Shown piece after piece: positions 1 to 38,530 of a stretch of 64,000 nt of DNA. Origin of the DNA: Mobula birostris (taxonomy: Eukaryota); the NCBI RefSeq assembly GCF_030028105.1, contig NC_092375.1:43933130-43997129 (forward strand), in the 5' to 3' direction. Every line of letters starts with the position of its first letter. The stretch's first letter is position 1. Under the pieces are notes generated by a model. The model was not told where the DNA came from and did not search any database. It was given only the letters and a program-made list of their open reading frames with translations. The translations under genes and the position numbers were made by a program.

Positions 1-399
1 GTCTGTTTTTGAAAGTTTTTCTGGAAGAAAGAGGTGTACATACATAGCTTTTGGTTTTCTAGATGAAGGCCACAATAATTTAATGTGCATAGGTAGATGC
101 ATGAAAATAAAATCCACCTTGAAGAACATCAAGGAAAAATCTGCACCAAGGGGATGGGCATGGCATTCTGACCAGCTATATCTGGGACATGAAACCAAGG
201 TAACCTTCAGTCTCCCTCACAGTTCAATATTTAGGAGCTGCTAACAATGAAGATAATAATTGTGCAGTCATGGTAAATGGAGTAGGTTAAAATGAATATT
301 AAATCCTTAGACTCAGGGATTCATACAACATGGAAACAGGACACTTGACTCTGCTACAGTTGGCCCAACTCGCCCCCAAGGCTACAGGACACAGATAAA

Positions 400-3300
400 C
401 TGCCAAGAGAGGAAAGGGAAAACATTAGAAAGTGGGGAGTACCCCTGTGGCCATCTCCCTCAACAATAAGTACTGTTGGGGGGGGGGCAACAACATAGCT
501 GGGTGAAGCAACACCAGCCGTGCCTCTGGTACTGATTTTGGCCTGTGGCTCAGAAGGCTAGGGAACTAAAGAGGATGGCAGCAGTAATAGGGGACTCTAT
601 ACAGGGGGACAGATACGTGACTCTGTAGCCGCAAAAAAGAAACATGGATGGTAGTTTGCCTCCCAGGTACTAGGGTCTGTGATCTTTCTAAACGCATCCA
701 CAATATCCTGAAAAGGGAGCATGAGCAGCCAGAAGCCGTGGTACATATTGATAGAAAAAGGGAGGAGGTCCTGAAAAGAGAATACAAGGCGTTACGAAGG
801 AAGTAGAGAAGTAGGACCTCAAAGGTAGGTATCTTGGGATTGCTGCCTGTGCCACATGACTGTGAGGATAGGAAACAAATGAGGTGGCAGATAAATGTGT
901 GGCTGAAGAATTGGAGCAGAGGGCAAGGATTCAGATTTCTGGATCATCGAGACCTCTTTTGGGGTAGGAGTGGCCTGTACAAAAGGAACGGGTTGCACTT
1001 GAATCTGAGGAGGACCAATATACTTGCAGCCAGATATGCTAAAGCTGTTGGGAGTGGTTTAAACTAATATGGCAGGGCGATGGGAACCAGTATGATAGAA
1101 CTGAGGATGAGCCTGCGAGTACATGATGGGTGTAATATGAATGTAAGGAAGGACAAACCAATGATGTGTACAACTCCAGACAGTGCAAAGAGTTAAATTG
1201 TACCACAGAGGCAAAATTCAAAAGGGAGAAGAATGCAGGACTGAAGGTGCTGTATTTAAATGTGCGTAGCATTCAGAATAAGATAGACAAACTCGTGGTG
1301 CAATTAGAGATTGGGCATTATGACATTGTAGGCATCACTGAGTCATGGTTGAAAGATGGTGATAGTTGGGAGCTTAATATCAAAGGATATACTTTGTATC
1401 AAAAGGACAGGCAGATAGGCTTAAGCGGTGGTTTGACCCTATTGGCAAGAGATGTAATTACTTCTTCAGGAAGAGGTGACATTGGGTCGGAGAATGTCAA
1501 ACCTTTGTGGAGTTAAGAAACTGCAAGGGTGAAAAAAACATTATGGAAATCATATAGAGGCCTCCAAATAGTAGCCAAGATGTGGGGTTGAGATTGCAAA
1601 GGGAGCTGAAAAAGGAATGTAATAAGGATTATGACACAATTGCAAAGGGGGACTTCAGTTTGCAAAGGGAGATTTCAGTATGCAAAAGGATTGGGAAAAT
1701 CAGGTTGGTGTCAGATCGCAAGAGAGGCGGTTTGTTGAATGCTTATGAGAAGGCTTTCTAGAGCAGCTTGCGCTTGAGCCTACATGGGGAAAGGCTATTT
1801 TAGATTGGGTGTTGTGCAATAACACAGAATCTTATTAGGGAGCTTAAGGTTAGAAAAACACCTTTAGGAGGCAGGGATTATAATATGATTGAATTCATAC
1901 TGCAGTTTGAGAGGGAAAGGCATATGTCAGATGTATCAGTATCACAATGGAATAAAGGGAATTACAGAGGCATGAGTGAGGAGCTTGCCCAGTTGTGCTG
2001 GAGAGGGATACTGGCAGGGATGATGGCAGAGCAGAGGTGGCTGAAGTTTCTCGGAATAGTTGTCAAGGCACAGGATAGATACGTCCCACAGAAGAAGTTC
2101 TCAAATGGCAGGGGTGGGCAACTGTGGCTGACAAGAGAAGTTAAGGCATGTATAAAAGTCAAGGAAAGGGCATATAATGCAGCAAAAGTGAGTGGGAAGT
2201 TGGATGATTGGGACGTTTTTAAAATCCAACAAACGGCAACTAAAAAAGCTATAAGAAGGGAAAAGGTGAAATATGAGGGCAAACTAGCCAATAGCATGGC
2301 GGGATACTAAAAGTTTTTTCAATTATATAAAAAGTAAAAGGAGGGTGAGAGTTGATATTCGAACATAGAAACATAGAAATCTACAGCACATTACAGGCCC
2401 TTCAGCCCACAATGTTTTGCCAACCATGTAACCTACTCTCAAGTTCCTATGGTTGTCATAGCCCGGGGGTGGTAGTGGGGATAAGCTCCCACTATCTATA
2501 AAATGCTCTAAATGGCGTGCGACTCTAACAGCCTCTGACAACCTAGTCCAGCTCTTGGTCTTCACCTGTGCCTTAGCTACTAGGCCTAGCAGAACTGTTT
2601 CTACTGACAAGAGAAGGGGCAAAGGCAGACCCACTTTGGAGTCCATTAGTAAGGATGAAGTTTCAGGGAACTTGGAGATTGATGATAAAATAAGTCAAAG
2701 TCAGCATGATTTCTGTAAAAGGAAATCTTGCCTGGAAAATCTGATAGAGTCCTTCGAGGAAGTAACAAGCAGGGTGGACAAAGGAGAGGCAGTGGATGTC
2801 ATTTACTTGGATTTCCAGAAGGCATTTGATAAGGTGCCTCACACTGAGACTGCTTATAGATAAAATCCCATGGCATTACAGGACAGATACTGCCATAGAT
2901 AGAGGAATGGCTGACAGGCAGGAAACAGAAGATTAATTTACAGGTTGAGTCTGTGGTAAAGAAGGCAAATGCAATGTTGGCATTTATTTCAAGGGGAATA
3001 GTATATAAAAACCAGGAGATAATGTTGAGCCTTTATAAGACACTAGTCAGGCTGCACCTGGAGTATGGTCAACAGTTTTGGGCCCCTTATCTCAGAATGG
3101 AAGTGTTGTCTTTGAAAAGAGTGCAGAGGAGGTTCACGAGGATGATAGCCAGGACAAAGGGGTTAGTATATGAGGAGTGTTTGGCATTTTTAGGTCTGTA
3201 TTCACTGGAATTTAGAAGAATGCAGGGTGGATCTCATTGAAACCTACTGAGTGTTGAAAGGACTAGATAAGGTGGATGTGGAGAGGATGTTTCCTATGGT

Positions 3301-3610
3301 GGAGTATCCAGAACTAGAGGGCATAGCCTCAAAATTGAGGGGCAACCCTTTAAAACAAAGGAAATGAGAAGTTTTTTAGCCAGAGAGTGGTGAATCTGTG
3401 GAATGCTCTGCCACAGGCAGCTGTGGAGGCCAAGACCATGGGAATATTTAAAGTGAAAATTGATAGTTTCCTGATTGGTCAGGCATTAAATGTTATAGCG
3501 AGAAGGCAGGTGCATGGTGTTGAGTGGGATCCAGGATCAGCTATGATGGAATGGTGGAGCAGACTCGATGGGCTGAATGGCCTAATTCTGCTCCTATGTC
3601 TTATGGTCTT
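400..3610 (+). mobile_element. CR1 LINE, near full-length and degenerate (3' part of ORF1 esterase, ORF2 APE endonuclease-RT, 3' tail)
   Basis: ORF1 SGNH/esterase-like GDS..RGTD and FRFLDH..LFWGRSGLYKRNGLHLN motifs at 590-1060. Endonuclease starts LKVLYLNVRSIQNK at 1245. RT fragments DVIYLDFQKAFDKVPH and LGLYSLEFRR. CR1 tail cctaattctgctcctatgtcttatggtctt ends near 3610. Multiple frameshifts and small nested insertions at 2360-2580. Confidence 0.9.
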
Positions 3611-3619
3611 AGCTCATCC

Positions 3620-3900
3620 ATGCCATCCAGTGGGCATTCGTCTGTATTATGCCCTTTCCCAACACTTGGTCTATTGCCCTCCCTGCCTAAGCGATTCAGG
3701 TGCTCATCTATTGCTGTTCCTTTTCGCACTTTGTGGCACATCAGACAGCATTTTTTACTGTTTTCTTAGCATTTGACTGTTTTTATGGGGTCAATTTGCT
3801 AGCTCAACACACAGATGTAAAGCATGATAGCAGATGGCCAGATTCAAACCCGGGACCAATCGCCTCGAAGTCTGATGCTGATGCCACTATACCACTGGCT
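3620..3900 (-). mobile_element. tRNA-derived SINE
   Basis: Minus-strand head has Pol III A box TGGTATAGTGG and B-box-like GTTTGAATC at 3836-3900, followed by a non-tRNA body. Confidence 0.65.
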
Positions 3901-3944
3901 AGTTTAGGTGCTTATCTATACACTTCGTAAATACCTTCAGTTAA

Positions 3945-4800
3945 CCAGCTGCTACTAAACTCTCAGAAGTGTGTTCCAAGAGAAGAAGGTCCCCCTCAGA
4001 TCCCCCTGAAATCTCTCCCACTTAACCTATACCTGTGTCATCTAATTTTAACTGCCTCTGATTTGGAAGACAGCTCCTACTGTCTATCCTATCTATACTA
4101 ATAATTTCTTATACCTTACCATGTCCCCTCTTAATGTCCTCCACTCTTCAGAGAACAGATAAGACTTCAACAGTCTCCTCAGGAGTGAACCATTTCATCC
4201 CAGGCAAATCTCCTCTCTATCCCAGCTCTATCATATCCTTCCTGTATATTGGGGTTCAGGCTGCACACAGTACTTCAGCTGAGGTATGACCTATATTTTA
4301 TAAATTAGTAGCATAACCTCTCTACCTCTGCATTTCCTTCCCCAGCTAATTAAAGCCACAATCGAACGTGCCTTTCTAACTAATTATCTTCCTGTGCAAT
4401 CGCCTTCAAGGACCTTTGAATGTCCTCCAAAATCCATCTGGCTGTCAGAACTCCCTGGAATCCTACCATGCATGGTCATTTGGCTCCCAAACTGCACCAC
4501 CTCATGTTTGTCTGGATAAAACTCCATATGCCATGTTTCATCGGCACAGTCTCACACTGCAGCCTAAAACAATCTTCCACACTATCAACTTCATGCCAGC
4601 TGTGAACTTACTCATCAAACGTCCCACACCCATACATATTTATAATGTATTGTTTATCTTACAAATATATATGAAGGTTGAAATATATATCTTACAGATA
4701 TATTATAAAAGCAGCAAGGTTCCCAGTACCAGCCTTTGTGGGACACCACTTGTCAAAGTCATTCAATTGTAGAAACCTTCAATCTGGCATTAACTTAATA
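3945..4800 (-). mobile_element. Old degenerate CR1 3' fragment
   Basis: Reverse complement of CR1 RT C-terminal and 3' UTR-like sequence, heavily mutated. Confidence 0.6.
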
Positions 4801-5339
4801 TCTAGGCAGTTAAAATATATTCCACTCAACAGACTCCATGTATTCCCCACTTTGCCTTCTTGGTGCCTCCCATCTAATGGCACCGGTAAATTAATTTAAA
4901 TAAGCTGGCAATACTTTACTGAACTTTCAGTACATCAGAGATCATGTGCATACGGTATGGGGTGGGGGTGGGAGTTGTTTGATTTCAAAGTATATACTTA
5001 CTCTGTTTACTGAATCTTTCTTCCATTTTCTCTTTGTTTGATTATCAACATTTTTGTCATGGGCTGATAAATCTATAAAAATACCATGAATATCATAAGC
5101 ATCTCAGGTTAGTGGGACATATATTTTCACATAGAAGCAACAGTCTTTTTTTACTGTTTTGCATTTTTAAATCTTTTTATTAATTATTATTGAAAATCAA
5201 CAAAAAAAAAGAAACAGTCTTGATACTGTAAGTAACAATTGGATACTAATCAGTATCAGCATTTCAATTTTTAATTCTTCAAATAATAATTGGCAAGTCA
5301 GCTTTTTTAAACTACATTCCTAAACTGTGGGACTGAATA

Positions 5340-6049: not shown

Positions 6050-7329
6050 ATATTCTCTCTAGAAAATGTCATTTGAGTAGAATTTAAAACAGATTTTCAC
6101 TTTTCTAATTACTTTTGCTTGAGAACTAAATGGGATGTTCACATTGATATACTCAGTTCAGTTACCAAGTAAAAATAAACAATGTATCTGATTACCTTTT
6201 CCATTCTTGTGTTTACAACATCGATTATTAATGATCCAGAGGCATAATGGTACAATGAGGGTAAGAGTCAGCAGAGCAAAATAATACTTGGGGAATCCTT
6301 CAAAATTACAATTGAAACGTAAATTAAAACAATGTCACAATGAAAAGCAAATAGATCTCTAACTGATGCATGTTACTTTACATAAAATATTTTAAATAGA
6401 CTCATACATATAACATAAATTGTACATTAAGACAGAACTATATTTAAATCTACCATTTCTCAGAGGTTGTCCTCATGAAATATGCCAATAGATAACCTTC
6501 TTCGGATCTTCACACAGAATATCAACAATACTTCTGCTTATGTAAAATCTAATTCTATTTCTACAAAAATCCTTAAATGCACAAAATAGCCTTTCAGTGG
6601 ACAAAACCCACACTGTCATGGAAGATGATATACAGAGTAATGATCTAATTATTCATGCCAAGGAACTGTCATACTTCATTGATTACCAATACAGTGAATT
6701 GCCACGATATAGTATTTTGTAAATTACCACAGCATAATCCGCTATGAAAGAGGAGCTGTCCAAAGTTGATTGGAAAGGAACACTAACTGGGATGACAGCA
6801 GAACAGCAAAGGCTGGAGTCTCTGTGGGCAATTCGGAAGGTGCAGGTTAGAAACATCGCAAAGATGGAGAGGTATTCAAAATGGAGGACAAGGCAAGCGT
6901 GGGTGACTGGTGAAGCTAAAGGCAGCATGAAAGCCAAAGAGAGGTCATATCATATAGCAAAAAATAGTGAGAAGTTAGAGGAAGTTAGGAACTTTTTAAA
7001 AACTAACAGAAGACAAAGTTAAAAACACAAGGAGTGAAAGATGAAATATGGAGATAAGGTAGACAAAAATATCAAAGACACCAAAAGTTTTTTTTCAGAT
7101 ATAAAGAGTAAAAGAGAGGTGAGAGTGGATATTGGAATGCGGGAGGTGACACTGGAGATGTAGTAACGGGAGCAAACTTAATACATATTTTGCATCAGTC
7201 TTCGTTATATCAGAAATTCGAGTGTGTTGGGGGCAGAAGTGAGTGCAGTTACTATTACTAAGGAGAAGGTGCTTGGGAAGCTGAAAGGTCTAGAACTAGG
7301 TAAGTCACCTGGACCAGATGAACTATAAC

Positions 7330-7505
7330 ACAAAATAATCTGCAGATGCTGGGGTCAAAGCAACGCTTTCAGTACGCTGGATGAACTCAGCAGGTCGGGC
7401 AGCATCAGTCAGAAATGATGAGTCGACGTTTCGGGCCGGAATCCTTCGTCAGGACTGAAGAATGAAAGATGGGGAAGGATTTGAAGAATGCTTGTAGCTT
7501 CAGTT
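7330..7505. mobile_element. Penelope-derived short repeat inserted in CR1
   Basis: ctgcagatgctgg...ctcagcagg..ggcagcatc signature shared with the copies at 39263, 40820 and 58070. Confidence 0.6.
7421..7457 (-). ncRNA. Minimal type-I hammerhead ribozyme motif
   Basis: Minus strand reads CAGUC CUGACGA AGGAUUCCGGCCC GAAAC GUC GACUC. Core intact, helix I AGUC/GACU, ACGU palindrome in place of helix III, weak helix II. Confidence 0.55.
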
Positions 7506-8504
7506 GAAAGGTCCCTCTGCAACCCATGATAGCGTTCGTCACTGTCCACAACTCCCCAAATCTTGGCGTCATCCACAAATTTGCTGATCCAGTTAACTAC
7601 ATTATCATCCAGATCATTGATATAGGTGACAAAGAACAATAGGCCCAGCACCGATCCCTGTGGCACACCACTAAGCACAGGCCTCCAGTCAGAGAGGCAA
7701 CCATCTACTACCACTCCCTGGCCTCTTAAAGCTAATGTCTAATCCAATTTACTACCTTATCTTGAATGCTGAGTGACTGAACCTTCTTTTCCAACCTCCT
7801 ATGCGGGGACCTAGTCAAATGCCTTGCTGAAGTCCATGTCAACAACATCCACTGCCTTGCCTTCATCCACTTTCCTGGTAACTTCCTCAAAAAGCTCTGT
7901 AAGACTGGTTAGACATAACCTATCACACACAAAGCCTTGCTGACTATCCTTAATCAGTCCATGTCTATCCAAATACTCATATATCTGGCCACTTAGAATA
8001 CCTTCCAATAACCTTCCCACAACTAATCTCAGACTCAGCAGCCCGTAATTTCCTGGTTTATGTATGGGGATGTTTGATGGCTCTGGGCTTGTATTCACTG
8101 GAGTTTAGAAGAATGAGCGAGGATCTTATTGAAACCTATCAAATACTGAAAAGCCTACTCAGAGCGGATGTGGAGAGGATGTTTCTTATAGTGGGTGAGT
8201 CTTGGACCAGAGGGCACAGCCTCCAAATAGAGGGACGTCCATTTAGAAAAGTGATGAGGAGGAATTTCTTGAGACAGAGGGTAGTGAATCTGTGGAATTC
8301 ATTGCCACAGGAGGCTGTGGAGGCCAAGACATTGAGTATATTTAAAGCAGAGGTAGATAGGTTCTTGATTAGTTAGTGTGTCAAAGGTTACAGGGAGAAG
8401 GCAAGAGAATGGAGTTGAGAGGAATAATCAATCAGCCATGATGAAATGGTGGAGCAAACTGGAAGAGCCAAGTTGCCTAATTCTGCTCGTATGCCTTATA
8501 AATG

Positions 8505-9180
8505 ATAAATTACCACAGTACGGTGTCTTATAAATTACCACAGTACGGTGTCTTATAAGTTACCCCAGTACAAATTATAAATTACCACAGTACAGTGTAT
8601 TATAAATTATAAATTACCACAGTACGGTGTCTTATAAATTACCACAGTACGGTGTCTTATAAATTACCACAGTATGGTATATTATAAATTACCACAGTAC
8701 GGTGTATTATAAATTATAAATTACCACAGTGCGGTGTCTTATAAATTACCACAATACAGTGTATTATAAATTATAAATTACCACAGTGCGGTGTATTATA
8801 AATTACCACAATACAGTGTATTATAAATTATAAATTACCACAGTACGGTGACTTGTAAATTACCACATTACAGTGTATTATAAATTATAAATTACCACAG
8901 TATGGTGTCTTATAAATTACCACAGTACGGTGTATTATAAAATTTAAATTACCACAGTGCGGTGTCTTACAAATTACCACAATACGGTGTATTATAAATT
9001 ATAAATTACCACAGCACAGTATTATAAATTACCACAGTACAGTGTATTATAAATTATAAATTACCACAGTACGGTGTCTTGTAAATTACCACAGTACAGT
9101 GTATTATAAATTATAAATTACCACAGTAGTGTATTATAAATTATAAATTACCACAGTATGGTGTATTATAAGTTACCACA
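8505..9180. repeat. Minisatellite, 25-bp unit TTATAAATTACCACAGTACGGTGT(C/A) with an optional extra TTATAAA; about 25 copies, plus 2 more at 9495-9532
   Basis: Direct inspection: unit spacing is mostly 25 or 32 bp. Confidence 0.95.
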
Positions 9181-12160: not shown

Positions 12161-12316
12161 NNNNNNNNNNNNNNNNNNNNNNNNNNNNNNNNNNNNNNNN
12201 NNNNNNNNNNNNNNNNNNNNNNNNNNNNNNNNNNNNNNNNNNNNNNNNNNNNNNNNNNNNNNNNNNNNNNNNNNNNNNNNNNNNNNNNNNNNNNNNNNNN
12301 NNNNNNNNNNNNNNNN
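12161..12316. other. Assembly gap (156 N)
   Basis: Run of N. Confidence 1.
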
Positions 12317-12689
12317 TATTACACAAGAGGGAAAAAACAGAAAATACTGGAAAGACTCGTTAGATCAGACAGCATCTGTGGAAAGAGAAGCAAGGTTAAT
12401 GTTTCAAATTAAGGACCTCGTAAGAACACAGTGCAAAGCAGGCAGATAGAAATGCCGGTGGAGAGAGCAACAGAAATAATTTCAGGCGGACATTCCTGGT
12501 GGGGAAGTGGTAATGATTTCAGCAATGAATGAGAATCAGACCTTTGCTGATGCTGCAAATCTGAATAACAACAGAAAATGCTGGAATCACTCATCAGTTC
12601 AAGCAGCAGCTGTAGAAAGAACCAGAGTGTCAATATTTCAGGTTAAAGATCCTACCACATCTTTGTTATTTTTAATTTAGTACTTCCTA

Positions 12690-13560: not shown

Positions 13561-14874
13561 CCTGCTGCAGTCGTTCATTTATGGCTGGCATTGTCCCACT
13601 CTGATTCCTTTTCTTTTATTGGTTGTTCAACCTACTTGGGAAGTCAGCCTTGTTGGCGGTTCAACTGGAACCCTTTAAACATTAATTCTGCTTCCTCTCC
13701 GTTTAATTTTTCGCACAGCGCCATGCAATCGTGATTTAGAGCAGGGAAATCTGGAATGATGATGATGAATTCAATTTCAGTGAGAGGCGATTGAAAGGGA
13801 CACCCCGTCGCAACCTAAAACTGCAATTTAGCAAGTCATCGTGACCTGGGATTTGATCATTCAGCGCCCGCCGAGTGGGCAAGGCATTTGTTCACTGAAC
13901 ACCCGAAACTTCGATTTCCTGCGCACTATAGCGATTGGAATTGGCTACAATTTGGCGGGGAGAAAGTGAATTTTGCCCTGATAGTAATCAATTCCGCTGA
14001 ACGTTGTTATTTTCTCTATTCACGACCACCCATGAATTGAAAATTCTCTCGGCGGCAAATGATCACAATAAATACAATTCGGAATTTGTTTCTTTCTATT
14101 GCTGTCCTTCCCCGAGCACCGCAACTTTCGGGGTATAAATTCTATGACCCAGCTGAAGGTGTTGCAATTGGCCACCTAGTGCAGTTTATAAACCATGGAA
14201 TTTCAACTGTCAATTGATGAAGACAGTATAAATTAGATTAATTTTACAATATGAACTTTGCGTTGCCAAGTAGTATCGGCCAGGGACCCGGGGAAGAGCA
14301 CTAACCCAGACAGGACGATGGGCGAAGTCCGGTAAAATTCTACTTTTTTTTCGCCATTTATATTTTACAGTATTGAGTTTTGTTTGATTGGATTTATATG
14401 AATTGGTTCATTAGATAATACCTGCAGCCTATTGCCATAATTCGTGAATGTGTTTTGCAGTAACGCTGTTCCGAAAAAGAATACTTCGTCGGTGCAAGCG
14501 CACGAAGAAACAAAATGTTGAAGATATTAGCAGATCACGCGGGTTGTGTAGAAAGTAAACGGCAGTGTATGCTTCTGGTCCAGGGACCAACGTCATGGTA
14601 TCCTCAGCTCTTGTCTCTATCCAATTCCTTTCATAAACCTTCACAAGTAGCAAATTATTTGAAACATTCACGATAACACACAGCGCAAGTTTTCTATCAA
14701 TACAATAAATTGAAATAAATTATTTCGCAATAAAAGACTGTAGATATTGTAGGCGTTACCCGAACGAATTGCTTTCAACATATGGTTTTATAAATTTACA
14801 AATTTTATCTCCAAATTTCACCCGTAATTGGGAGAAGCAGGTTGTGAGATTTACTCCCTGTGTAAACCACCTAC

Positions 14875-15168
14875 CTCGGTTGAAAGTGAAACTTGTCCTC
14901 ACACTCCCTGTAACATGTCGAACCAGGCAGGTGGCGACCCGAACTGACTCCCGCCGAGCGTCGGTCAGCCACAGCCGGGAGCTCAAGTTGTAGGTAAGGT
15001 CCTCGTTTACCCTCAGCGGATCCGCCTCTGTTTCGTACGAGACATCTCCCGTTACAGTCCAAGAAATATTCAGATCTTTCGGGAAAAATCCCGTCGCCAC
15101 ACAAATCAGGGTCTGAACCCCAGCGGCTTCGTTCTTCGGATCCAGAGAGAGGGAGACGTCAGGCTTCG
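14875..15168 (-). CDS. Exon 4 of non-rearranging VJ-C1-C1 receptor gene: Ig C1-set domain (C1b)
   Basis: 294 bp, phase 1-1, acceptor ctgtgcAG, donor GTAGGT. AKPDVSLSL..TLICVATGFFPKDLNISW..EDLTYNLSSRL..ATCLVRH has the C1-set Cys-Trp-Cys and GFFP motifs. Confidence 0.92.
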
Positions 15169-15749
15169 CTGCACAGAACGGGAGAATTAACACATGGTGA
15201 ATTTTACTGTAACCCAGATGGATACATACAGCAAGAGTGGACACAAGTGAAGACGGTGCACGATATAAAGGTAACACTCTGAACCGAGTTGATTATTTTG
15301 TGTCTCAAAATTCGCACTGGCAGGAAGAGAAACAAAATACAGCCCGAGAATGGAATGAATTTGGAATGTTACAGCGAGTGTAAGTAAAAAAAGATGCTGG
15401 AGATTTAGAATGTTAAAAAAACAGAACCGCTGGAAGTATCCAGCTGGTCTGGTCGAAGAGACGCAGAGTTCTGACGAAAGGTCTTCAATACCAAACGTTA
15501 ACTCTGTTTCTCTCTCCACATTTGCGACCTGACCTGCTGAGTGTTTCCAGCACGTTCTAGCTTTATTTTTCAGTTCTTTTCGACCAGGCACATGTTGGTC
15601 ACAAGATGCAAGTTACGCTGGTAGGATGTTCCAACAAGGATGCTTCACGGTTCCGATTCCCCATTAAAAATCCCTAATTTTACTTCCAAATTTCACCCGT
15701 AGTTGAGAGAAGCAGGTTGTGAGATTTACTCCCTGTGTAAACCACTTAC

Positions 15750-16043
15750 CTCGGTTGAAAATGAAACTTGTCTTCACACTCCCTGTAACGTGTCGAACCA
15801 GGCAGGTGGCGACGGGAACTGACTCCCGCCGAGAGTCGGTCACCCGCAGCCGGGAGCTCAGGTTGTAGGTAAGGTCCTCGTTTACCCTCAGCGGATCCGC
15901 CTCTGTTTCGTACGAGACATCTACCGTTACAGTCCAAGAAATATTCAGATCTTTCGGGAAAAATCCTGCCGCCACACAAATCAGGGTCTGAACCCCAGCG
16001 GCTTCGTTCTTCAGATCCAGAGAGAGGGAGACGTCAGGCTTCG
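15750..16043 (-). CDS. Exon 3 of non-rearranging VJ-C1-C1 receptor gene: Ig C1-set domain (C1a)
   Basis: 294 bp, phase 1-1, acceptor ctgtgcAG, donor GTAAGT. 13 nt and 9 aa differences from the copy at 14875-15168. Confidence 0.92.
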
Positions 16044-16897
16044 CTGCACAGAACGGGAGAATTAACACATGGTGAATTTTACTGTAACCCAGATGGATAC
16101 ATACAGCAAGAGTGGACACAAGTGAAGACGGTGCACGATATAAAGGTAACACTCTGAACCGAGTTGATTATTTTGTGCCTCAAAATTTCACACCGGCAGG
16201 AAGAGAAACAAAATACAGTCCGGGAACGGAATGAATTTGAAATGTTACAGCACGTGAAAATAAAAAAGATGCCAGAGATTTTAAATTTTTTATTGAAAAA
16301 CAGAACCCGTTGGAAATATCCAGCAGGTCAGGTCGGAGAGTCGAAGATTTCCAACGAAAGTTCTTCAATACCAAACGTTAACTCTATTTCTCTCTCCGCA
16401 TCTGTGACCTGACATGCTGAGAGTTTCCAGCACTTTCTAGTTTTATTTTTCAGCTCCTTTCGACCAGGCACACATTGGTCACAAAACGCAAATTACACTG
16501 GCAGTGTGTCCCAACAATCGCAGTTCCGGTTCCCCATTACCAATCGCTCCGGTGTTTAACCGATTTCTCATCGGCTATTTTAACCGCCTCTCTACCAGTG
16601 AATTTTTGGGATGTGGCGCTGATGTATTCGGCGACATATCTTCTCCTCCCCATGCGGGAGATTGTTTCGGTGTTGCTTAATCTGGTTACTTTGGGTCAGA
16701 AGCAAAACACAAACCAAACGCCGCGAAGACAGGATTCCTTCAACAGGTCAGGGCGCCTTTGGGGAAAGGGACCTAAAGACTCGTTTTGCAGCTCGGCAAT
16801 TGGTCTGAGATTTTGCCTCCAGTTCCCTAGCTTCACACTTTGCCCAGTCTGCTGAGTATTTCCAGTGTTTACTAGTTTCGTTTCATACGTACTGTAC

Positions 16898-17221
16898 CTC
16901 GGATGGTTACTTCTGTTCCGTTTCCAAAATATGTTTTCCAGGAACCCGAATCCATTCTCAGCGCTGAGCAAAGGTAGGTGTCAGAGTCATCCACAGTCAC
17001 CTCCCGAATGACCAGCCCGCCTTCCTTCACAGATACAGAGATCCGAGCGCCATTTTTCAGGAAATTATTGGACCCGTTTACAGGATGGCCTCGTGTCCGA
17101 GTCCAATAATATCTCGCCGAATCCACCCGCTCGTCCCCGGATAACAGGGAACAGCTGATCCTAGCTGTCTGTCCTCGGAGAAGAGTCAGAGCTGAAGGTG
17201 TCTGGTTCACTTTCAGAGCAA
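16898..17221 (-). CDS. Exon 2: germline-joined VJ-type Ig V-set domain
   Basis: 324 bp, phase 1-1, acceptor ttccgttctAG, donor GTACAG. ALKVNQTP..ARISC..YYWT..DDSDTYLC..YFGNGTEVTIR has both Cys, the Trp, DxxxYxC and the J-type FGxG motif in one exon. Confidence 0.93.
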
Positions 17222-17314
17222 CTAGAACGGAAAATCACGACAATTAGCAAAAAGATTCAAAATTATGAGAAGGCAACGAGAATAAATGTCAAACGGAGAG
17301 AACGCGTGAATTAC

Positions 17315-17363
17315 CGGGGAGAAACAGCCAGAGCGTGTACAATAAGCTTCCGAGTAGTGACAT
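17315..17363 (-). CDS. Exon 1: signal peptide of the VJ-C1-C1 gene (MSLLGSLLYTLWLFLP)
   Basis: ATG at 17363, 16 hydrophobic codons plus 1 nt, donor GTAATT, 93-bp intron, splices in frame to the V exon. Confidence 0.88.
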
Positions 17364-23960: not shown

Positions 23961-25702
23961 AACTTTTTCCAAAACATCTCCACTTTTTTCCCCTTCTCTT
24001 GAGCAAGCACTGTGGAGAACTATTCACTTATCTATCCCACCTGTTTCCTGTGGCTTGAGACATTTACGACCCTGCTGGTATCTGAGAGGACCTACTCTCT
24101 CTAGACACCTTTTTATTCTTTATGTAGTTGGACATCCTCTGAGAATTGTGCTTAATCTTAAGTGCCAAATCCATCTCTTATATTCTCTTTGCCCTCCTGA
24201 TTTCCATCGTTACTGTATTCTTAATCTTTTTATGGCCATCGAGAGACTTACATCTCCTCGACTTCTTAAAAGCATTGTTCACTTTCTTCTTTATCTTAAC
24301 AAGTGCAACTGGGGCATTTTATGCCCCGCTGGTGCTAGATGCTTTGTTTTCATATTACTGAGATGTTTGTGTGTTAAAAAGAACTACTTTGGCCTTTAGT
24401 ACAATGTATGATTTCATCTGTGGGAATGGTTGATTTCATAGACGGTAGAGTGAAGGAGTTCAAAATAAAACAGAGAATATTCAGTAGGTTAAGTAGCATT
24501 TGTGGGAAGGGAAACAGAGGTAACATTTCTGGTTGAAGAGTTTTAGTCAGGACTGGGAAGGAGACCAAAGACACTCGTAAAGAGGTAGGGTGGAGGATGG
24601 GAAGAAAGGGGAATGCTTCTGATAGGATAAAATGAGGGTAACCATGGAGTTAGGCTAACAATCAAAGTTATCTGGTCAGTGATTAAATGGGAGCAGTAAG
24701 AGGGTGATAACATAGACAAAGAATGGGGGAGACTGGTCATGTCCACCACTTCCAAAGAAAAGAAATAGGGAAGGAGGAAATCTGTGCTAATATTACAGAT
24801 GGGCAACTGACACAGACCAAGAAATCACATTACCTAAGGCTATAACATTCAGAATGGAATCCAAAAGATTGCAACATGCCCACACAGATTGGGTTCTTCT
24901 CTTCATGTTTGATATTTTACCTGACCATTATGTCATTGCATGGTATGCTCATTTTTCTGTGAAAGGTTTCATTTTCAGATTATTCATTGTCATACACACC
25001 GGAGTGCAATAAAACTCCTTGTCCATGTGAAGATCACAGAGTAAACAGTGCACATGGTAACAATAATAAATATAACAACAGGTGCAAACCAAAGGAACGG
25101 TGCAAAGTATAGTAGTGCAAACTGAAGTTGTCCAAGAAGAAATGCTGAATACAATAATGGAAGAGGTAGATGGACAAGGAGTTCCTAGCCAACCCAGTTA
25201 CCATTTATTCCATTGTTTAAGCTTTAATATACACCATTGCAGAAAAATACATTAGGCATCCTATGAAGATTCAGCATTAGATGTGGCATGAAGTGCAGGG
25301 TTGTTGAGAAGTGAAGGTGGCGCCAGCAAACAATATGACCAAAGCCAACGTCTTTCAGACAGTCCACAAAACTACTTCTTTCACTTTTTTTTCCTCTCAA
25401 ATGTGGTTCGGCTACTGTTGGACCCTGTGATCTACATTGCAGTGGTGTGTTTTCGGGCCAAGTCCGCAATCTGGTGCTTTGCTGTCTCCAAGGGGGTTCC
25501 ATGAGGTTTCATGCAAACTGTGCGGTCTGAAGGCCAAAAGTCCTGGAGACAGGGTGTGAGCCCACGATTCACACTGCTTCTCACCAATCTCATCGAGGAA
25601 AAATGAAATTATCTAGGCGAGAGTGGAAAGTGAGCAGGTTCAGCTCCATCTACCAGCTTCTTGCTTGGTGCTGCCAGAGCAAGGTGTCTGCATGTGACAA
25701 TT

Positions 25703-26340
25703 CTCTCTCTCACCCTCTCATCCGCTGCTCCCAGAGGGAGGTCCCGGCATTCAAATGGTCTCTCTCTCACCCTCTCATCCGCTGCTCCCAGAGGGAGGTC
25801 CTGGCATTCAAATGGTTTCTCTCTCACCCTCTCATCCGCTGCTCCCAGAGGGAGGTCCCTGCATTCGAATGGTCTCGCTCTCACCCTCTCATCCGCTGCT
25901 CCCAGAGGGAGGTCCCTGCATTCGAATGGTCTCTTTCTCTCACCCTCTCATCTGCTGCTCCCAGAGGGAGGTCCTGGCATTCAAATGGTCTCTCTCTCAC
26001 CCTCTCATCCGCTGCTCCCAGAGGGAGGTCCCTGCATTCGAATGGTCTCGCTCTCACCCTCTCATCCGCTGCTCCCAGAGGGAGGTCCCTGCATTCGAAT
26101 GGTCTCTTTCTCTCACCCTCTCATCTGCTGCTCCCAGAGGGAGGTCCTGGCATTCAAATGGTCTCTCTCTCACCCTCTCATCCGCTGCTCCCAGAGGGAG
26201 GTCCCTGCATTCGAATGGTCTCGCTCTCACCCTCTCATCCGCTGCTCCCAGAGGGAGGTCCCTGCATTCGAATGGTCTCTCTCTCACCCTCTCATCCGCT
26301 GCTCCCAGAGGGAGGTCCCTGCATTCGAATGGTGTCGCTC
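25703..26340. repeat. Minisatellite, 57/59-bp unit, 11 copies, with 173-bp higher-order periodicity
   Basis: caccctctcatc recurs at 25711, 25768, 25825, 25882, 25941, 25998, 26055, 26114, 26171, 26228 and 26285. Confidence 0.95.
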
Positions 26341-27214
26341 TCCCTCTCCCTCAAAGCTGCTGGGAGATGGTGCTGGCATCCTGGTCTTGGGCAAGGTTTA
26401 ACTGATGCGTTTTGTGAATTGGACTCTGTAGATCACGTTACGATGTGTTCCTGGTTTCTGGTCGCACTTTTTTTGTTGCTATTTTGATTGGAGTGGACCA
26501 GCTCTGCAACCTGAAGTTAACGGGCAACACAGAGCTGGATTGAACTGAACTGAGCTGAACTGAATATGTCTGGACTGGTTGGATGATTTGTAGTTTGGTG
26601 TTTTATATTCTGTGTTTTCACTTGTTTTCTTTTTTGCTGTTTGTTTGATGTGTTCTTTTTTTTGCATGTTGGGAGTTTGATGTTTTTCTTTGTGTGGATC
26701 CATGGTTATTCTTTGTTTTGTGGTTACCTGTAGGAAGACAAATCTCAGGGTTGTATATTGCACACATTCTTTGATAATAAATGTACCTTGAATCTTGAAT
26801 CTTTGAATTTATGGTTGGAAGTCTGTCAAAGAATCATACACTGCAGAGTTGTGCACTCACACGCCATGTGTTGTGGTGCAAGATCAGCAGTGGTGCAGAT
26901 AATGGAGCTGTTGCCTTACAATTTAACTAACTAGGTTTATTCCTGACTTCTAGTACTGCCTACATGGAGGTTGCATGTTCTCCCCGTGACTGTGCATGTT
27001 TACTCTGGATTTCTCCCATATCCCAGACGAGTTGCTGGTTAGGTTAAATGACTTCTGTGTACCTGCTCCTGGTGTACAGGTGAGTTGTAGAATCTCAGGA
27101 GAGTTAACAGGGATGTGAGCACGATAAAACTTTGCATAAACACAGAAATAGTGTAAATGGGTGTTTGATGCGCAGGGGATTCAGGCATGGCGAAGACACT
27201 ATGATACAGATATA

Positions 27215-28500
27215 TACTCAGTGGTCACTTTATTGGTACAGGAGGTGCCTACTAAAGTGGCCACTGATTGAATGTCCATGGTCTTCTGTTGCTATAGCCC
27301 ATCCACTTCGAAGTTTGACTTGCTGTGTGTTCAGAAATGCTCTTCTGCACACCACTTTTGAGTTATTTGAGTTACTGTCACCTTCCCATCAATTTGAACC
27401 AGTCTGGCCATTCTCCTCTGACCTCCATCACTAGCAAGGCATTTTTGCCTACAGATCTCCCTTCACTGGATGTTTTTTTTAAAAAAATATTTGTTTCTTT
27501 TTTGCACCATTCTCTGTAAACTTTGAACTCTTAAACTCTAAGAGCCTGTGTATAGAAACATAGAAAATAGGTGCAGGAGTAGGCCATTCGGCCCTTCGAG
27601 CCTGCACCGCCATTTATTATGATCATGGCTGATCATCCAACTCAGAACCCCGCCCCAGCCTTCCCTCCATACCCTCTGATCCCCGTAGCCACAAGGGCCA
27701 TATCTAACTCCCTCTGAAATATAGCCAATGAACTGGCCTCAACTGTTTCCTGTGGCAGAGAATTCCACAGATTCACCACTCTCTGTGTGAAGAAGTTTTC
27801 CCTAATCTCGGTCCTAAAAGGCTTCCCCTTTATCCTCAAACTGTGACCCCTTGTTCTGGACTTCCCCAACATCGGGAACAATCTTCCTGCATCTAGCCTG
27901 TCCAATCCCTTTAGGATTTTATACGTTTCAATCAGATCCCCCCTCAATCTTCTAAATTCCAACGAGTACAAGCCCAGTTCATCCAGTCTTTCTTCATATG
28001 AAAGTCCTGCCATCCCAGGAATCAATCTGGTGAACTTTCTTTGTACTCCCTCTATGGCAAGGATGTCTTTCCTCAGATTAGGGGACCAAAACTGCACACA
28101 ATACTCCAGGTGTGGTCTCACCAAGGCCTTGTACAACTGCAGTAGTACCTCCCTGCTCCTGTACTCGAATCCTCTCACTATAAATGCCAGCATACCATTC
28201 GCCTTTTTCACCACCTGCTGTACCTGCATGCCCACTTTCAATGACTGGTGTATAATGATGTGCATGAAAATCCCAGGAGATCAGCAGTTTCTGAGATGTT
28301 CAAAGTATCTCACCTGGCATGAACAATCATTCTATGGACAAAATCACTTAGATCATATTAATTCCCCATTCTGATGTTGGTCTGAGCAACAACTGAACAC
28401 CTTGACCTCGTCTGCATGCTTTTATGCACTGAGTGGCTGCCACAATTGACATTAATGAGCAGGTGTACTGGTGTACCTAACAAACTGGCCACTGAGAGTA
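27215..28500. mobile_element. Tc1/mariner-type non-autonomous element interrupted by a CR1
   Basis: Imperfect TIRs TACTCAGTGGTCACTTTATTGGTAC and GTACCTAACAAACTGGCCACTGAGAGTA, with TA at both ends. Confidence 0.65.
27553..28262 (-). mobile_element. Young 5'-truncated CR1 (RT C-terminus and 3' tail)
   Basis: Open 207-aa frame HQSLKVGMQVQQ..LEYCVQFWSP..LGLYSLEFRR..QRVVNLWNSLP, with tail tttctatgtttcta. Confidence 0.93.
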
Positions 28501-28664
28501 AGCGGCAAGACAAACAGAGACAAGAAATTTGCATCCATACATTCTGATAGAGAGGTTTCCAATCTAATTTGTTTCTATTATCATCTTTTGCTCTGATAAG
28601 TATACAATTTCTCATAGTCTACAAAATGGTCTGCATCCCACAGTGCTTCAGGAAGTAGCCCAAG

Positions 28665-30167
28665 AAATAGTGGATGCATTAGTGATAATTTTTCAAAACT
28701 CTTTAGATTCTGGACTAGTTCCTGAGGATTGGAGGGTGGCTAATGTAACCCCACTTTTTAAAAAAGGAGAGAGAAACCAGGGAATTATAGACCAGTTAGC
28801 CTAACATCGGTGGTGGGGAAAATGCTAGAGTCAGTTATCAGAGATGTGACAACAGCACATTTGGAAAGCGGTGAAATCATCGGACAAAGTCAGCATGGAT
28901 TTGTGAAAGGAAAATCATGTTGACGAATCTCAGAATTTTTTGAGGATGTAACTAGTAGAGTGGATAGGGGAGAACCAGTGGATGTGGTATATATTTGGAT
29001 TTTCGATAGGCTTTTGACAAGGTCCCACACAGGAGATTAGTGTGCAAACTTAAAGCACACGGTATTGGGGGTATGGTATTGATGTGGATAGAGAATTGGT
29101 TGGCAGACGGGAAGCAAAGAGTGGGAATAAACGGGACCTTTTCAGAATGGCAGGCAGTGACTAGTGGGGTACCGCAAGGCTCAGTGCTGGGACCCCAGTT
29201 GTTTACAATATATATTAATGACTTAGACGAGGGAATTAAATGCAGCATCTCCAAGTTTGCGGATGACACAAAGCTGGGCAGCAGTGTTAGCTGTGAGGAG
29301 GATGCAGGGTGACTTGGATAGGTTAGGTGAGTGGGCAAATTCATGGCAGATGCAATTTACTGTGGATAAATGTGAGGTTATCTACTTTGGTGGCAAGAAC
29401 AGGAAAACAGATTATTATCTGAATGGTGGCCGATTAGGAAAAGGGGAGGTGCAACGAGACCTGGGTGTCATTGTACACCAGTCATTGAAAGTGGGCATGC
29501 AGGTACAGCAGGCAGTGAAAAAGGCGAATCGTATGCTGGCATTCATAGCAAGAGGATTAGAGTACAGGAGCAGGGAGGTTCTACTGCAGTTGTACAAGGC
29601 CTTGGTGAGACCACACCTGGAGTATTGTGTGCAGTTTTGGTCCCCTAATCTGAGGAAAGACATTCTTGCCATAGAGGGAGTACAAAGAAGGTTCACCAGA
29701 TTGATTCCTGGGATGGCAGGACTTTCATATGATGAAAGACTGGATCGACTAGGCTTATACTCTCTGGAATTTAAGAGGGGGGATCTGATTGAAATGTATA
29801 AAATTCTAAAGGGATTGGACAGGCTAGATGCAGGGAGATTATTCCCGATGTTGGGGAAGTCCAGAACGAGGGGTCACAGTTTGAGGATAAAGGGGAAGCC
29901 TTTTAGGATCGAGATGAGGAAAAACTTCTTCACACAGAGAGTGGTGAATCTGTGGAATTCTCTGCCACAGGAAACAGTTGAGGCCAGTTCATTGGCTATA
30001 TTTAAGAGGGAGTTAGATATGGCCCTTGTGGCTAAAGGGATCAGGGTGTACGGAGAGGAGGCAGGTACAGGGTTCCGAGTAGGACGATCAGCCATGATCA
30101 TACTGAATGGCGGTGCAGCCTCAAAGGGCCGAATGGCCTACTCCTGCACCTATTTTCTATGTTTCTA
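28665..30167 (+). mobile_element. Young 5'-truncated CR1 (RT domain to 3' tail)
   Basis: [21 protein letters not shown] and a 303-aa C-terminal frame, with tail tttctatgtttcta at 30167. Confidence 0.93.
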
Positions 30168-38260: not shown

Positions 38261-38530
38261 CTGAGAATATCACTCGAGTCTGCGTAGGCTTGACCATCCA
38301 TTGATGAGTCATGGAGCAGATATAGTGATTCATCTTATCAATTACTTTCAAATCATTTGTCACGTTGAAATATCCATCACTTTCCCTCAATTTTATTTCA
38401 TTATGCACTGCCAATGCATTCCCAAGCTGGTCCCTCCACGTAACTTCTGGAGCAGGGTACCACCCTGAAGACCGGCATGACAGCACATCTGAATCGGAAT
38501 CCCAGAAAACATGGATGCCATCTGTACTAG
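38261..38530 (-). CDS. B7/butyrophilin-family gene, IgC exon
   Basis: 270 bp, phase 1-1, acceptor ttttatcttggtAG, donor GTAGGT. LSCRSSGWYPAPEVTW..DGYFNVTNDL..YIC is the B7/BTN C-domain signature. Confidence 0.9.

What the first reader, a model, noticed from the sequence alone, without database searches (positions are those of the whole stretch)
14875..17363. Intact non-rearranging VJ-C1-C1 antigen-receptor-like gene
Seen: leader (49 nt), one exon encoding a complete V domain plus J-type FGNGTEVTI (324 nt), and two C1-set exons (294 nt each). All are open, phase 1 and canonically spliced within 2.5 kb, giving an ~320-aa ectodomain. No RSS or separate J segment lies near the V. Established: VJ-type V domains with C1 domains outside the rearranging loci are rare (SIRP, tapasin, B7-H6, shark UrIg, PRARP-type genes; NKp30 is VJ only) and are discussed as relatives of the pre-RAG receptor. 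Inference: this is an elasmobranch germline-encoded receptor of that class and may belong to an uncharacterised family. I cannot assign it to a named gene from memory.
Basis: partly seen in the sequence, partly recalled or inferred. Interest (0 to 1): 0.85.

Follow-up and report, generated by a model that had tools for sequence, protein, structure and literature searches.

The report
Manta ray V-C1-C1 inhibitory receptor gene
This is a real, intact manta-ray gene for a cell-surface protein with an antibody-like tip that needs no DNA rearrangement and a tail with inhibitory signalling motifs; related genes occur in sharks, rays and frogs, databases name them inconsistently, and I found no paper describing them.

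Summary
On the minus strand lie a 49-nt leader, a 324-nt single-exon VJ-type V domain and two 294-nt C1-set exons. All are phase 1 with AG/GT splice sites, and no RSS lies nearby.

The gene continues beyond the finding. A transmembrane exon lies at 6297-6196 and a cytoplasmic exon at 5072-5002. The last exon sits 5.3 kb beyond the window start and carries an ITIM (LQYASV) and an ITSM-like motif (TEYAAL). The seven exons translate exactly to a 466-aa NCBI model, 'signal-regulatory protein beta-1-like [Mobula birostris]'.

Orthologues occur in at least 13 other sharks and rays. NCBI gives them inconsistent automatic names (SIRP-like, Ig kappa-like, TCR-beta-like). Sharks have one C1 exon. The second manta C1 exon comes from an 875-bp tandem duplication.

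A partner gene has a near-identical ectodomain but a short tail without tyrosines. It lies next to a TTF2-like helicase gene in both rays and a shark. The nearest outside relatives are frog V-C1-TM genes.

Identity to SIRP, Ig light chains, TCR-beta, B7-H6 and UrIg2 is uniformly low (about 17-31%), so none is a clear orthologue.

My best reading is a germline-encoded, SIRP-like paired inhibitory receptor from a family I found described in no paper. PRARP or SIRP orthology could not be excluded. The scan had not noted this gene before.

The parts
17315..17363 (-). Leader exon (49 nt). It starts with ATG at 17363 and is followed by a GT donor. The leader is split: the last few signal-peptide residues are encoded in the V exon.
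   Evidence: The spliced product equals P0066 residues 1-320.
16898..17221 (-). Single-exon VJ-type V domain (324 nt, phase 1 to 1), ending in the J-like motif FGNGTEVTI. The W-to-C distance is short (43 residues), and no C'/C'' strands are predicted.
   Evidence: Pfam V-set E 1.2e-9. Best PDB sequence matches are TCR V-alpha and shark VNAR, E about 1e-8. AF2 V-C1 model, mean pLDDT 86.8. No RSS nearby.
15750..16043 (-). C1-set exon C1a (294 nt, phase 1 to 1).
   Evidence: Pfam C1-set E 8.3e-12. Splice sites.
14875..15168 (-). C1-set exon C1b (294 nt, phase 1 to 1). It differs from C1a at 13 nt, including 9 amino-acid replacements.
   Evidence: Pfam C1-set E 8.5e-13. Differences and pN/pS.
14792..16544 (-). 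Two tandem copies of an approximately 875-bp unit (16544-15667 and 15664-14792). Each holds one C1 exon plus flanking intron. This is the duplication that made the second C1 domain.
   Evidence: the repeat finder families D1-D3, spacing 875-880. Exons are 95.6% identical and the upstream intron 83%. The Stegostoma orthologue has a single C1 exon.
6196..6297 (-). Transmembrane exon (102 nt, phase 1 to 1). It encodes the stalk residues GFPKYY, the TM helix and the juxtamembrane CC-K-H-K.
   Evidence: tblastn with P0001-P0004 and P0066. Boundaries. Included in the exact CDS reconstruction.
5002..5072 (-). First cytoplasmic exon (71 nt, phase 1 to 0). The last exon lies outside the window at about -5324 to -5590 (L001 32688-32954). 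It encodes LQYASV, TEYAAL and the stop codon.
   Evidence: The seven-exon CDS translates exactly to P0066 plus stop.

Best explanation
The locus encodes a germline-encoded (non-rearranging) type I membrane glycoprotein of the giant manta ray. Its parts, in order, are:
- a signal peptide
- one VJ-type V domain, the presumed ligand-binding tip
- two C1-set domains forming a stalk
- a transmembrane helix with juxtamembrane cysteines
- a cytoplasmic tail with an ITIM (LQYASV) and an ITSM-like motif (TEYAAL)

Shown here: the exon structure, the domain types, the motifs, the family's conservation across sharks and rays, and its sequence constraint.

Inferred: ligand binding by the V domain leads to tyrosine phosphorylation and recruitment of SH2 phosphatases (SHP-1/2 type), which damps cell activation.

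Also inferred: a linked partner gene with an almost identical ectodomain acts as the activating or decoy counterpart. That partner has a different TM segment with an Arg at its outer edge and a short tail without tyrosines. The pair would then work like SIRP-alpha/SIRP-beta or other paired immune receptors.

The ancestral architecture is V-C1-TM-tail. The second C1 domain in manta and stingray comes from a young tandem exon duplication, kept similar by gene conversion or by its recent origin.

The family has relatives in frogs. It is not demonstrably orthologous to any named family.
For: Gene structure
- Exons, phases and splice sites are confirmed.
- The seven-exon CDS translates exactly to the 466-aa NCBI model P0066.
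- The window is 100% identical to M. birostris CM057561.1.
- Pfam finds V-set plus two C1-set domains.

Family
- Members occur in 7 other rays and 7 sharks, with conserved tail motifs LHYASV ... TEYAVL ... YSTV ... TTYASL.
- The Stegostoma orthologue has the same exon plan with one C1 exon.
- Manta versus Stegostoma gives dN/dS 0.47 overall (TM 0.32, V 0.43) at dS 0.72, which indicates purifying selection.

Partner genes
- P0068, P0067, P0079 and P0076 are partner genes.
- P0068, P0079 and P0076 lie tail-to-tail with a GRF-zinc-ribbon plus SNF2 helicase gene in two Mobula species and in Hemiscyllium.
- P0079's V domain shares with P0066 a stretch that is identical by eye, where the M. hypostoma orthologue P0068 differs. 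Overall V identity is 89.5%. I read this as possible gene conversion between the paired genes.

Outside relatives and structure
- Frog relatives are V(-V)-C1-TM proteins. P0020 carries LHYATI and TEYAAV.
- The AF2 V-C1 model (pLDDT 86.8) is an extended V-C1 unit. Its best rigid match is B7-H6 (Z 15.5), followed by light chains.
Against: - I could not examine any transcript or protein data. Expression rests on the NCBI gene model and on sequence conservation.
- Tyrosine motifs are short, and ITIM function is inferred. In the manta the two most C-terminal tyrosine motifs of sharks are lost.
- dN/dS of about 0.5 is only moderate constraint.
- C1a versus C1b shows pN roughly equal to pS (0.042 vs 0.053). 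One C1 copy could therefore be evolving neutrally.
- The partner's Arg sits at the membrane boundary rather than mid-helix.
- The M. birostris partner model P0079 reads part of its C1 exon in another frame. It may be a pseudogene or an assembly error.
- Distinctness from SIRP and PRARP rests on low, non-discriminating similarity and on partial synteny, not on a tree.
Confidence: 0.75

Rival explanations
1. It is the true elasmobranch orthologue of the SIRP family: SIRP-alpha-like inhibitory plus SIRP-beta-like partner, as NCBI's automatic names suggest.
For: - It shares the general plan: a VJ-like V domain, C1-set domains, a TM helix, a multi-tyrosine ITIM tail, and a linked partner with a short tail.
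- SIRPB1 and SIRPA are among the best Swiss-Prot structural matches (E about 1e-12, 22-23% identity).
- SIRP-alpha 2wng ranks sixth in the PDB sequence search with C1a (E 5e-10).
Against: - The same searches give equal or better scores to B7-H6, Ig light chains, TCR-beta, tapasin-related protein and UrIg2.
- SIRP V domains are absent from the top 60 V-domain matches.
- Orthologues in other species are auto-named Ig kappa-like, TCR-beta-like and Ig heavy chain Mem5-like. These names coincide with entries among the Swiss-Prot structural matches, so they look like best hits rather than orthology calls.
- The ancestral form has one C1 domain, not two. The second C1 in rays is a recent duplicate of the first.
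- The partner genes sit beside a TTF2-like helicase gene. From memory, human TTF2 is at 1p13 and the SIRP cluster at 20p13.
Confidence: 0.15
2. [quoted passage not shown] 2019). That paper's title, as cited in PMC10751288, describes two non-rearranging IgSF genes in chicken.
For: - PRARP is cited as a VJ gene family in PMC10751288.
- This locus also has a pair of genes, and one member carries ITIMs.
- Relatives exist in amphibians.
- From memory only: chicken PRARPs are closely linked and carry ITIMs.
Against: - The exhaustive V-domain search over 1.84 billion representatives found only elasmobranch and amphibian relatives. It found no bird or bony-fish V-C1 protein and no matching reptile V-C1 protein.
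- PMC10751288 places PRARP in the MHC. This locus instead sits beside a TTF2-like gene and a B7/BTN-like gene.
- From memory only: chicken PRARPs have a single V domain without a C1 domain.
Confidence: 0.08
3. It is a germline-joined immunoglobulin light-chain or TCR-type cluster, or a third UrIg-type secreted 'antibody', rather than a signalling receptor.
For: - The V domain's best PDB sequence matches are TCR V-alpha, VNAR and light-chain V.
- The best whole-chain PDB match of the C1 domain is UrIg2 9dmx.
- Tandemly duplicated, homogenised C exons recall UrIg2 (PMC12227049).
- Cartilaginous-fish lambda light chains are germline-joined (PMC12227049).
Against: - TM and ITIM-tail exons are spliced to the C1 exons in an exactly matching gene model. 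They are conserved in sharks.
- There are no hinge exons, no 3-9 distinct C domains, and no IgM-like TM as described for UrIg and UrIg2.
- Per-domain identity to UrIg2 is only about 31%, no higher than to ordinary Ig C domains.
- The locus sits next to a TTF2-like gene and a B7-like gene. No Ig or TCR genes were found in this window.
Confidence: 0.04

Closest known systems
SIRP family (SIRP-alpha/beta/gamma; PDB 2wng, 4i2x)
   Same: - Germline VJ-like V domain on C1-set domains, a single TM helix and a multi-tyrosine inhibitory tail.
- A linked partner gene with a similar ectodomain and a short tail.
- An extended V-C1 geometry in the predicted model.
- It most plausibly works like a SIRP.
   Different: - Only 22-23% identity, no better than to light chains or TCR-beta.
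- One ancestral C1 domain instead of two.
- The V domain is shorter and has no predicted C'/C'' strands.
- The partner genes neighbour a TTF2-like gene.
- The ligand is unknown.
UrIg and UrIg2 of elasmobranchs (Flajnik et al. 2023, 2025; PDB 9dmx)
   Same: - Non-rearranging single-exon VJ domain with a split leader, followed by C1-set domains.
- Elasmobranch distribution.
- C exons multiplied by tandem duplication and kept similar.
- UrIg2 is the best whole-chain PDB match of the C1 domain.
   Different: - UrIg is secreted, has 3 C domains and is MHC-linked.
- UrIg2 has 9-11 C domains (hinge exons in batoids) and an IgM-like TM, and it lies in the Ig/TCR complex.
- This gene has 1-2 C1 domains, an ITIM tail and a different TM.
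- Frog relatives exist.
- UrIg2's V domain is not among the top V-domain matches.
Teleost NITRs and other paired ITIM/charged-TM IgSF receptors (KIR, LILR, PILR). This comparison is from general knowledge.
   Same: V domain with a J-like motif encoded in the germline, and inhibitory and putative activating forms with similar ectodomains.
   Different: The second domain of NITRs is not C1-set, and NITRs are large multigene families. Here there are one or two genes per genome.
IgNAR / NAR-TCR V domains and TCR V-alpha
   Same: They are the best sequence matches of the V domain among solved structures (E about 1e-8). The gene shares VNAR's short C-to-D region. It is 34.5% identical to a Heterodontus protein (P0054) whose V domains I judged NAR-TCR-like.
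   Different: Those V domains are assembled by RAG recombination. This one is a single germline exon without an RSS.
B7-H6 (NCR3LG1; PDB 3pv7)
   Same: It is the best rigid-body structural match of the predicted V-C1 unit (Z 15.5, rmsd 2.9 A over 183 residues; top Swiss-Prot hit).
   Different: About 20% identity. B7-H6 is a ligand with no J-type ITIM receptor design. The match concerns domain geometry in a predicted model.

Membership tests
Rearranging antigen receptors (Ig/TCR) | V and J are separate gene segments flanked by recombination signal sequences. | tested here: not met
   V and the J-like strand lie in one 324-nt exon. No heptamer-spacer-nonamer lies within kilobases of it; the 64 kb hold two weak matches, at 2840 and 12433.
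Germline-joined Ig light chain cluster | Leader, VJ and a single C exon giving a secreted chain of about 235 aa with no TM or tail. | tested here: not met
   There are two C1 exons plus TM and cytoplasmic exons. The CDS equals the 466-aa model. The TM and tail are conserved in sharks.
SIRP family | V plus two distinct C1-set domains (d2 and d3), a TM helix, and a tail with ITIMs. | tested here: inconclusive
   The V domain, C1 domains, TM helix and ITIM tail are present. However, sharks have one C1 exon, and the ray's second C1 is a young copy of the first.
SIRP family | Sequence grouping with SIRPs above other V-C1 proteins. | tested here: not met
   SIRPA and SIRPB1 give 22-23% identity and E about 1e-12, the same range as B7-H6, IgK/L, TCR-beta and TAPBPL. 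SIRP is absent from the top 60 V matches. No tree with SIRP sequences could be built.
SIRP family | Conserved synteny with the SIRP cluster, and CD47 binding. | not testable with these tools
   Only 10-kb flanks could be read. The partner genes lie next to a GRF plus SNF2 (TTF2-like) gene. The human map positions are from memory.
UrIg / UrIg2 | VJ followed by 3 (UrIg, secreted) or 9-11 (UrIg2, IgM-like TM, hinge exons in batoids) C1 domains, linked to the MHC or to the Ig/TCR complex. | tested here: not met
   This gene has 1-2 C1 domains, an ITIM tail and a different TM. The family descriptions come from PMC12227049. Per-domain identity to 9dmx is about 31%.
PRARP (Fu et al. 2019) | Sequence grouping with chicken PRARP1/2 and their fish, amphibian and reptile orthologues. 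| not testable with these tools
   The paper and its sequences are not held. The exhaustive V search found no bird or teleost V-C1 relative.
Paired inhibitory/activating IgSF receptors (functional class) | An inhibitory member with a cytoplasmic ITIM or ITSM. | tested here: met
   LQYASV and TEYAAL are in the manta tail. LHYASV, TEYAVL, xxYSTV and TTYASL are conserved in sharks.
Paired inhibitory/activating IgSF receptors (functional class) | A partner with a near-identical ectodomain, a short tail and a charged TM residue for an adaptor. | tested here: inconclusive
   P0067 and P0068 have ectodomains 82-88% identical to the manta protein, and the tail has no tyrosine. The Arg lies at the outer TM boundary. 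Adaptor binding was not tested.

The most novel reading that the evidence does not exclude
Together with its frog relatives, this family is a third surviving lineage of non-rearranging VJ-C1 antigen-receptor-like genes, beside UrIg and UrIg2. Unlike those two, it is a membrane-bound, signalling-competent receptor, and it lies in an MHC-paralogous neighbourhood (TTF2-like gene, B7/BTN-like gene).

Its short V domain lacks C'' and is most similar to NAR and TCR V domains. It would then be the closest germline relative of the kind of cell-surface receptor whose V exon the RAG transposon split.
Probability: 0.2. Interest if true: 0.8.

Novelty: new member of a known kind. Interest (0 to 1): 0.55.

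Why it matters
Single-exon VJ domains joined to C1-set domains outside the Ig/TCR loci are few. They are the main material for reconstructing the receptor that the RAG transposon invaded (PMC12227049).

This family adds a conserved example from cartilaginous fish and frogs that is a membrane receptor with an inhibitory tail and a paired partner. The automatic names given to its members conflict with each other and hide the family.

It also gives a concrete case of C1-exon duplication and homogenisation like that reported for UrIg2. If the family turns out to be the basal SIRP or PRARP lineage, that too would date these paired receptors to the origin of jawed vertebrates.

Tried and rejected
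- **Candidate TM exon at 12560 (minus strand):** a hydrophobic ORF behind a good acceptor. Rejected because no family protein matches it, and by eye its acceptor resembles a repeat that recurs in these introns. The real TM exon is at 6297.
- **ITIM exons inside window 1-4998:** none found. The last exon lies outside the window.
- **V-domain-only AF2 model:** mean pLDDT 60. Too poor, so not used for fold searches.
- **Word-indexed homologue searches with P0001, A1 and A4**: these reached only elasmobranchs, frogs and one bird Ig heavy chain. I therefore obtained no named reference sequences (SIRP, UrIg, PRARP, TCR, IgL) as usable ids, and could build no cross-family tree.
- **Multi-Ig hits of the representative search** (obscurin-, titin-, hemicentin- and NCAM-like): their scores are summed over many domains, so they say nothing about relationship.
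- **Profile searches of the PDB**: the C1 ranking is dominated by multi-domain heavy chains and does not discriminate.
- **Foldseek and VIA searches**: all V-C1 proteins score alike.
- **Papers not held:** Ohta 2019, Flajnik 2023 (UrIg) and Fu 2019 (PRARP).
- **Locus look-ups:** DNA and coordinates of the partner locus P0079 could not be fetched, so the distance between the paired genes is unknown. P0001 is not in the contig index.
- **Assembly gap:** the window gap 12161-12316 lies in intron 4.
Full report
**1. The observation**

The gene lies on the minus strand. Translation and motif location give four exons:
- a 49-nt leader (17363-17315, starting with ATG)
- a 324-nt V exon (17221-16898)
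- two 294-nt exons (16043-15750 and 15168-14875)

Each internal exon is preceded by AG and followed by GT. All junctions are phase 1, and the spliced product is open for 320 residues.

Pfam calls the V exon V-set (E 1.2e-9). It calls both other exons C1-set (E 8e-12 and 8.5e-13), all above the curated cut-offs.

The V exon ends in the J-like strand YFGNGTEVTI. The leader is split, as in antigen-receptor V genes.

A scan for recombination signals found only two weak matches in the whole window, at 2840 and 12433, far from the V exon.

**2. The rest of the gene**

An exhaustive HMMER search with the V domain found full-length relatives. Mapping them back with tblastn located two further exons:
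- a 102-nt transmembrane exon (6297-6196)
- a 71-nt cytoplasmic exon (5072-5002)

The last exon is not in the window.

One relative, P0066, is NCBI's 'signal-regulatory protein beta-1-like [Mobula birostris]', 466 aa. It begins with exactly my 320-residue product.

Its genomic locus L001 is 100% identical to the window. The window is therefore M. birostris chromosome record CM057561.1, about 43.93-44.00 Mb.

The last exon lies 5.3 kb beyond the window start. With it, the seven exons translate exactly to P0066.

That exon carries an ITIM (LQYASV), an ITSM-like motif (TEYAAL) and a YEEP site.

I did not read the part of L001 that corresponds to the window's assembly gap (12161-12316, in intron 4).

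**3. The duplicated C1 exon**

The two C1 exons belong to two tandem copies of an 875-bp unit that includes intron sequence. The numbers are:
- 13 of 294 nt differ between the exons, including 9 amino-acid replacements
- pN 0.042 and pS 0.053
- the upstream intron copies are 83% identical

Sharks have a single C1 exon. The Stegostoma orthologue has the same exon plan (leader, VJ, C1, TM, two cytoplasmic exons) with one C1.

Hypanus also has two C1 domains. In a C1 tree the copies fall by lineage (mobulid versus dasyatid), not by position or by gene, with little resolution. That fits concerted evolution or repeated duplication. It recalls the homogenised C exons reported for UrIg2.

**4. The family**

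Word-indexed and profile searches found members in these taxa:
- rays: Mobula (two species), Hypanus, Hemitrygon, Pristis, Narcine, Leucoraja
- sharks: Scyliorhinus, Mustelus, Stegostoma, Hemiscyllium, Heptranchias, Heterodontus, Cetorhinus

Their automatic names disagree: SIRP-beta-1-like, PTPNS1-like, Ig kappa light chain-like, Ig heavy chain Mem5-like, TCR-beta MC.7.G5-like. Swiss-Prot entries with these names (SIRPB1, PTPNS1/SIRPA, Ig kappa light chain, Ig heavy chain Mem5, TCR-beta MC.7.G5) are among the structural matches. I take the names to be best hits, not orthology calls.

The shark proteins are V-C1-TM with a tail holding four or five conserved tyrosine motifs: LHYASV, TEYAVL, FYEE, xxYSTV and TTYASL.

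Manta versus Stegostoma gives dN/dS 0.47 overall at dS 0.72. By region it is V 0.43, C1 0.56, TM 0.32 and tail 0.51. This is moderate purifying selection over the shark-ray divergence, as is usual for immune receptors.

**5. A paired partner**

Hemitrygon P0067 and M. hypostoma P0068 have ectodomains 82-88% identical to the manta protein. They differ after the C1 domain. There they have a hydrophobic segment preceded by an Arg, then a short tail without tyrosines.

M. birostris has its own copy, P0079. Its model reads part of the C1 exon in another frame, which suggests a frameshift or an assembly error. A stretch of its V domain looks identical to P0066, by eye, where the M. hypostoma orthologue differs. 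That suggests gene conversion between the two genes (overall V identity 89.5%).

Three of these partner genes lie tail-to-tail with a gene of about 1,180-1,220 aa that has a GRF zinc ribbon and an SNF2 helicase domain: P0068, P0079 and Hemiscyllium P0076. This architecture fits TTF2. That identification rests on Pfam content only.

The arrangement of an inhibitory gene plus a short-tailed look-alike is that of paired receptors such as SIRP-alpha/beta. The activating role of the partner is inferred.

**6. Relatives outside elasmobranchs**

After the family itself, the best V-domain matches among 1.84 billion representatives are frog proteins:
- Leptobrachium P0020: V-V-C1-TM, with LHYATI and TEYAAV in the tail
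- Lithobates P0059, Aquarana P0083 and P0108, and Mixophyes P0109: V-C1-TM

They share 26-38% identity across both domains and the same conserved positions. Pfam calls their second domain C1-set.

No chimaera, teleost, bird or mammal V-C1 protein appeared, and the only reptile hit was a Pogona tandem-V (Ig lambda-like) protein. The remaining hits were large multi-Ig proteins whose scores are sums over many domains.

**7. Comparison with named families**

Among solved structures, the V domain's best sequence matches are TCR V-alpha and shark VNAR domains (E about 1e-8). SIRP and UrIg2 V domains are not in the top 60.

The C1 domain's best whole-chain match is UrIg2 (9dmx). Per domain this is 24-25 bits and about 31% identity, the same as for ordinary antibody C domains. 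SIRP-alpha ranks sixth. The profile search is dominated by multi-domain heavy chains.

An AF2 model of V-C1a (pLDDT 86.8) shows a V domain with no strands between C and D. This fits the short W-to-C distance of 43 residues and resembles VNAR.

Foldseek against Swiss-Prot models puts the following all within E 6e-13 to 1e-11 at 17-24% identity: B7-H6, SIRP-beta-1, SIRP-alpha, tapasin-related protein, Ig kappa and lambda, and TCR-beta.

The VIA second look gives B7-H6 (Z 15.5, rmsd 2.9 A) ahead of light chains (Z about 13). This reflects an extended rather than bent domain junction in a predicted model.

None of this singles out a parent family.

By architecture the gene is not UrIg (secreted, three C domains, MHC-linked). 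Nor is it UrIg2 (nine to eleven C domains, hinge exons in batoids, IgM-like TM, in the Ig/TCR complex).

It is not a germline-joined light chain, because it has TM and tail exons.

SIRP membership fails the sequence-grouping test and is ambiguous on architecture, since the ancestor had one C1 domain.

PRARP membership could not be tested because the paper and its sequences are not held.

**8. Surroundings**

About 21 kb upstream of the gene, on the same strand, lie a B7/butyrophilin-type V exon (42158-41817) and a BTN-type Ig-C exon (38530-38261). Their best matches are CD276, VTCN1, MOG and BTN2A1.

The rest of the window is repeats: RT-bearing LINE fragments and 57-bp satellites.

From memory, TTF2 and VTCN1 are neighbours on human 1p13, an MHC-paralogous region. 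If the ray genes are their orthologues, this family sits in such a paralogon. That is a lead, not a result.

**9. Verdict**

The feature is real. It is an intact, conserved, germline-encoded VJ-C1(-C1) receptor gene with an inhibitory tail and a paired partner.

It works most like a SIRP-type paired receptor and belongs to a family with frog relatives. I found no paper on this family and could not assign it to SIRP, PRARP, UrIg/UrIg2 or Ig/TCR.

It is already a predicted gene model in NCBI, so the novelty lies in recognising the family and its features, not in the locus itself.

Noticed in passing
window 38261-38530 and 41817-42158 (minus strand): These are two exons of a B7/butyrophilin-like gene. 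One is a V-set exon (342 nt) whose F strand reads DYMLFV, with no canonical cysteine, and which has extra cysteines in the B-C region. The other is a BTN-type Ig-C exon (270 nt). Best PDB matches are CD276, VTCN1, MOG and BTN2A1. The leader and TM exons were not located.
   Followed up: partly
outside the window: M. birostris gene for P0079, on the same chromosome record: This is the putative partner gene of the receptor. Its NCBI model switches to another reading frame inside the C1 exon, which suggests a frameshift, pseudogene or assembly error. A stretch of its V domain looks identical to the window's gene where the M. hypostoma orthologue differs, suggesting gene conversion. It lies 4 kb from a GRF plus SNF2 (TTF2-like) helicase gene.
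   Followed up: partly
window 25702-26342: A 57-bp tandem repeat, about 11 copies, 93% matches. It produces long open frames on both strands that are not genes.
   Followed up: no
window 8505-9178: An AT-rich tandem repeat (period 25/32/57, 87% matches for the 57-mer) inside the 8.6-kb intron between the C1b and TM exons. It sits beside reverse-transcriptase-like fragments at about 7400-8400.
   Followed up: no
window 48349-54054 (plus strand): A long LINE-like element. It has a coiled-coil ORF1-like frame (48349-49113), and downstream frames of which one (52114-52551) matches Pfam RVT_1. Other RT-like fragments lie at 1136-3773, 27645-30165 and 55300-56800.
   Followed up: partly
window 12410-12560 (minus strand): A hydrophobic ORF in phase 1 behind a strong-looking acceptor. 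By eye, the acceptor lies in a repeat that recurs in these introns (near 15520-15580, 16410-16460 and 16850-16880). It mimics an exon, and no family protein matches it.
   Followed up: yes
P0009 cluster (Pogona vitticeps): These lizard gene models string two to four near-identical V domains, each ending in a J-like motif, in one protein ('Ig lambda-1 chain V regions-like'). They could be tandem germline-joined V domains or an annotation artefact.
   Followed up: no
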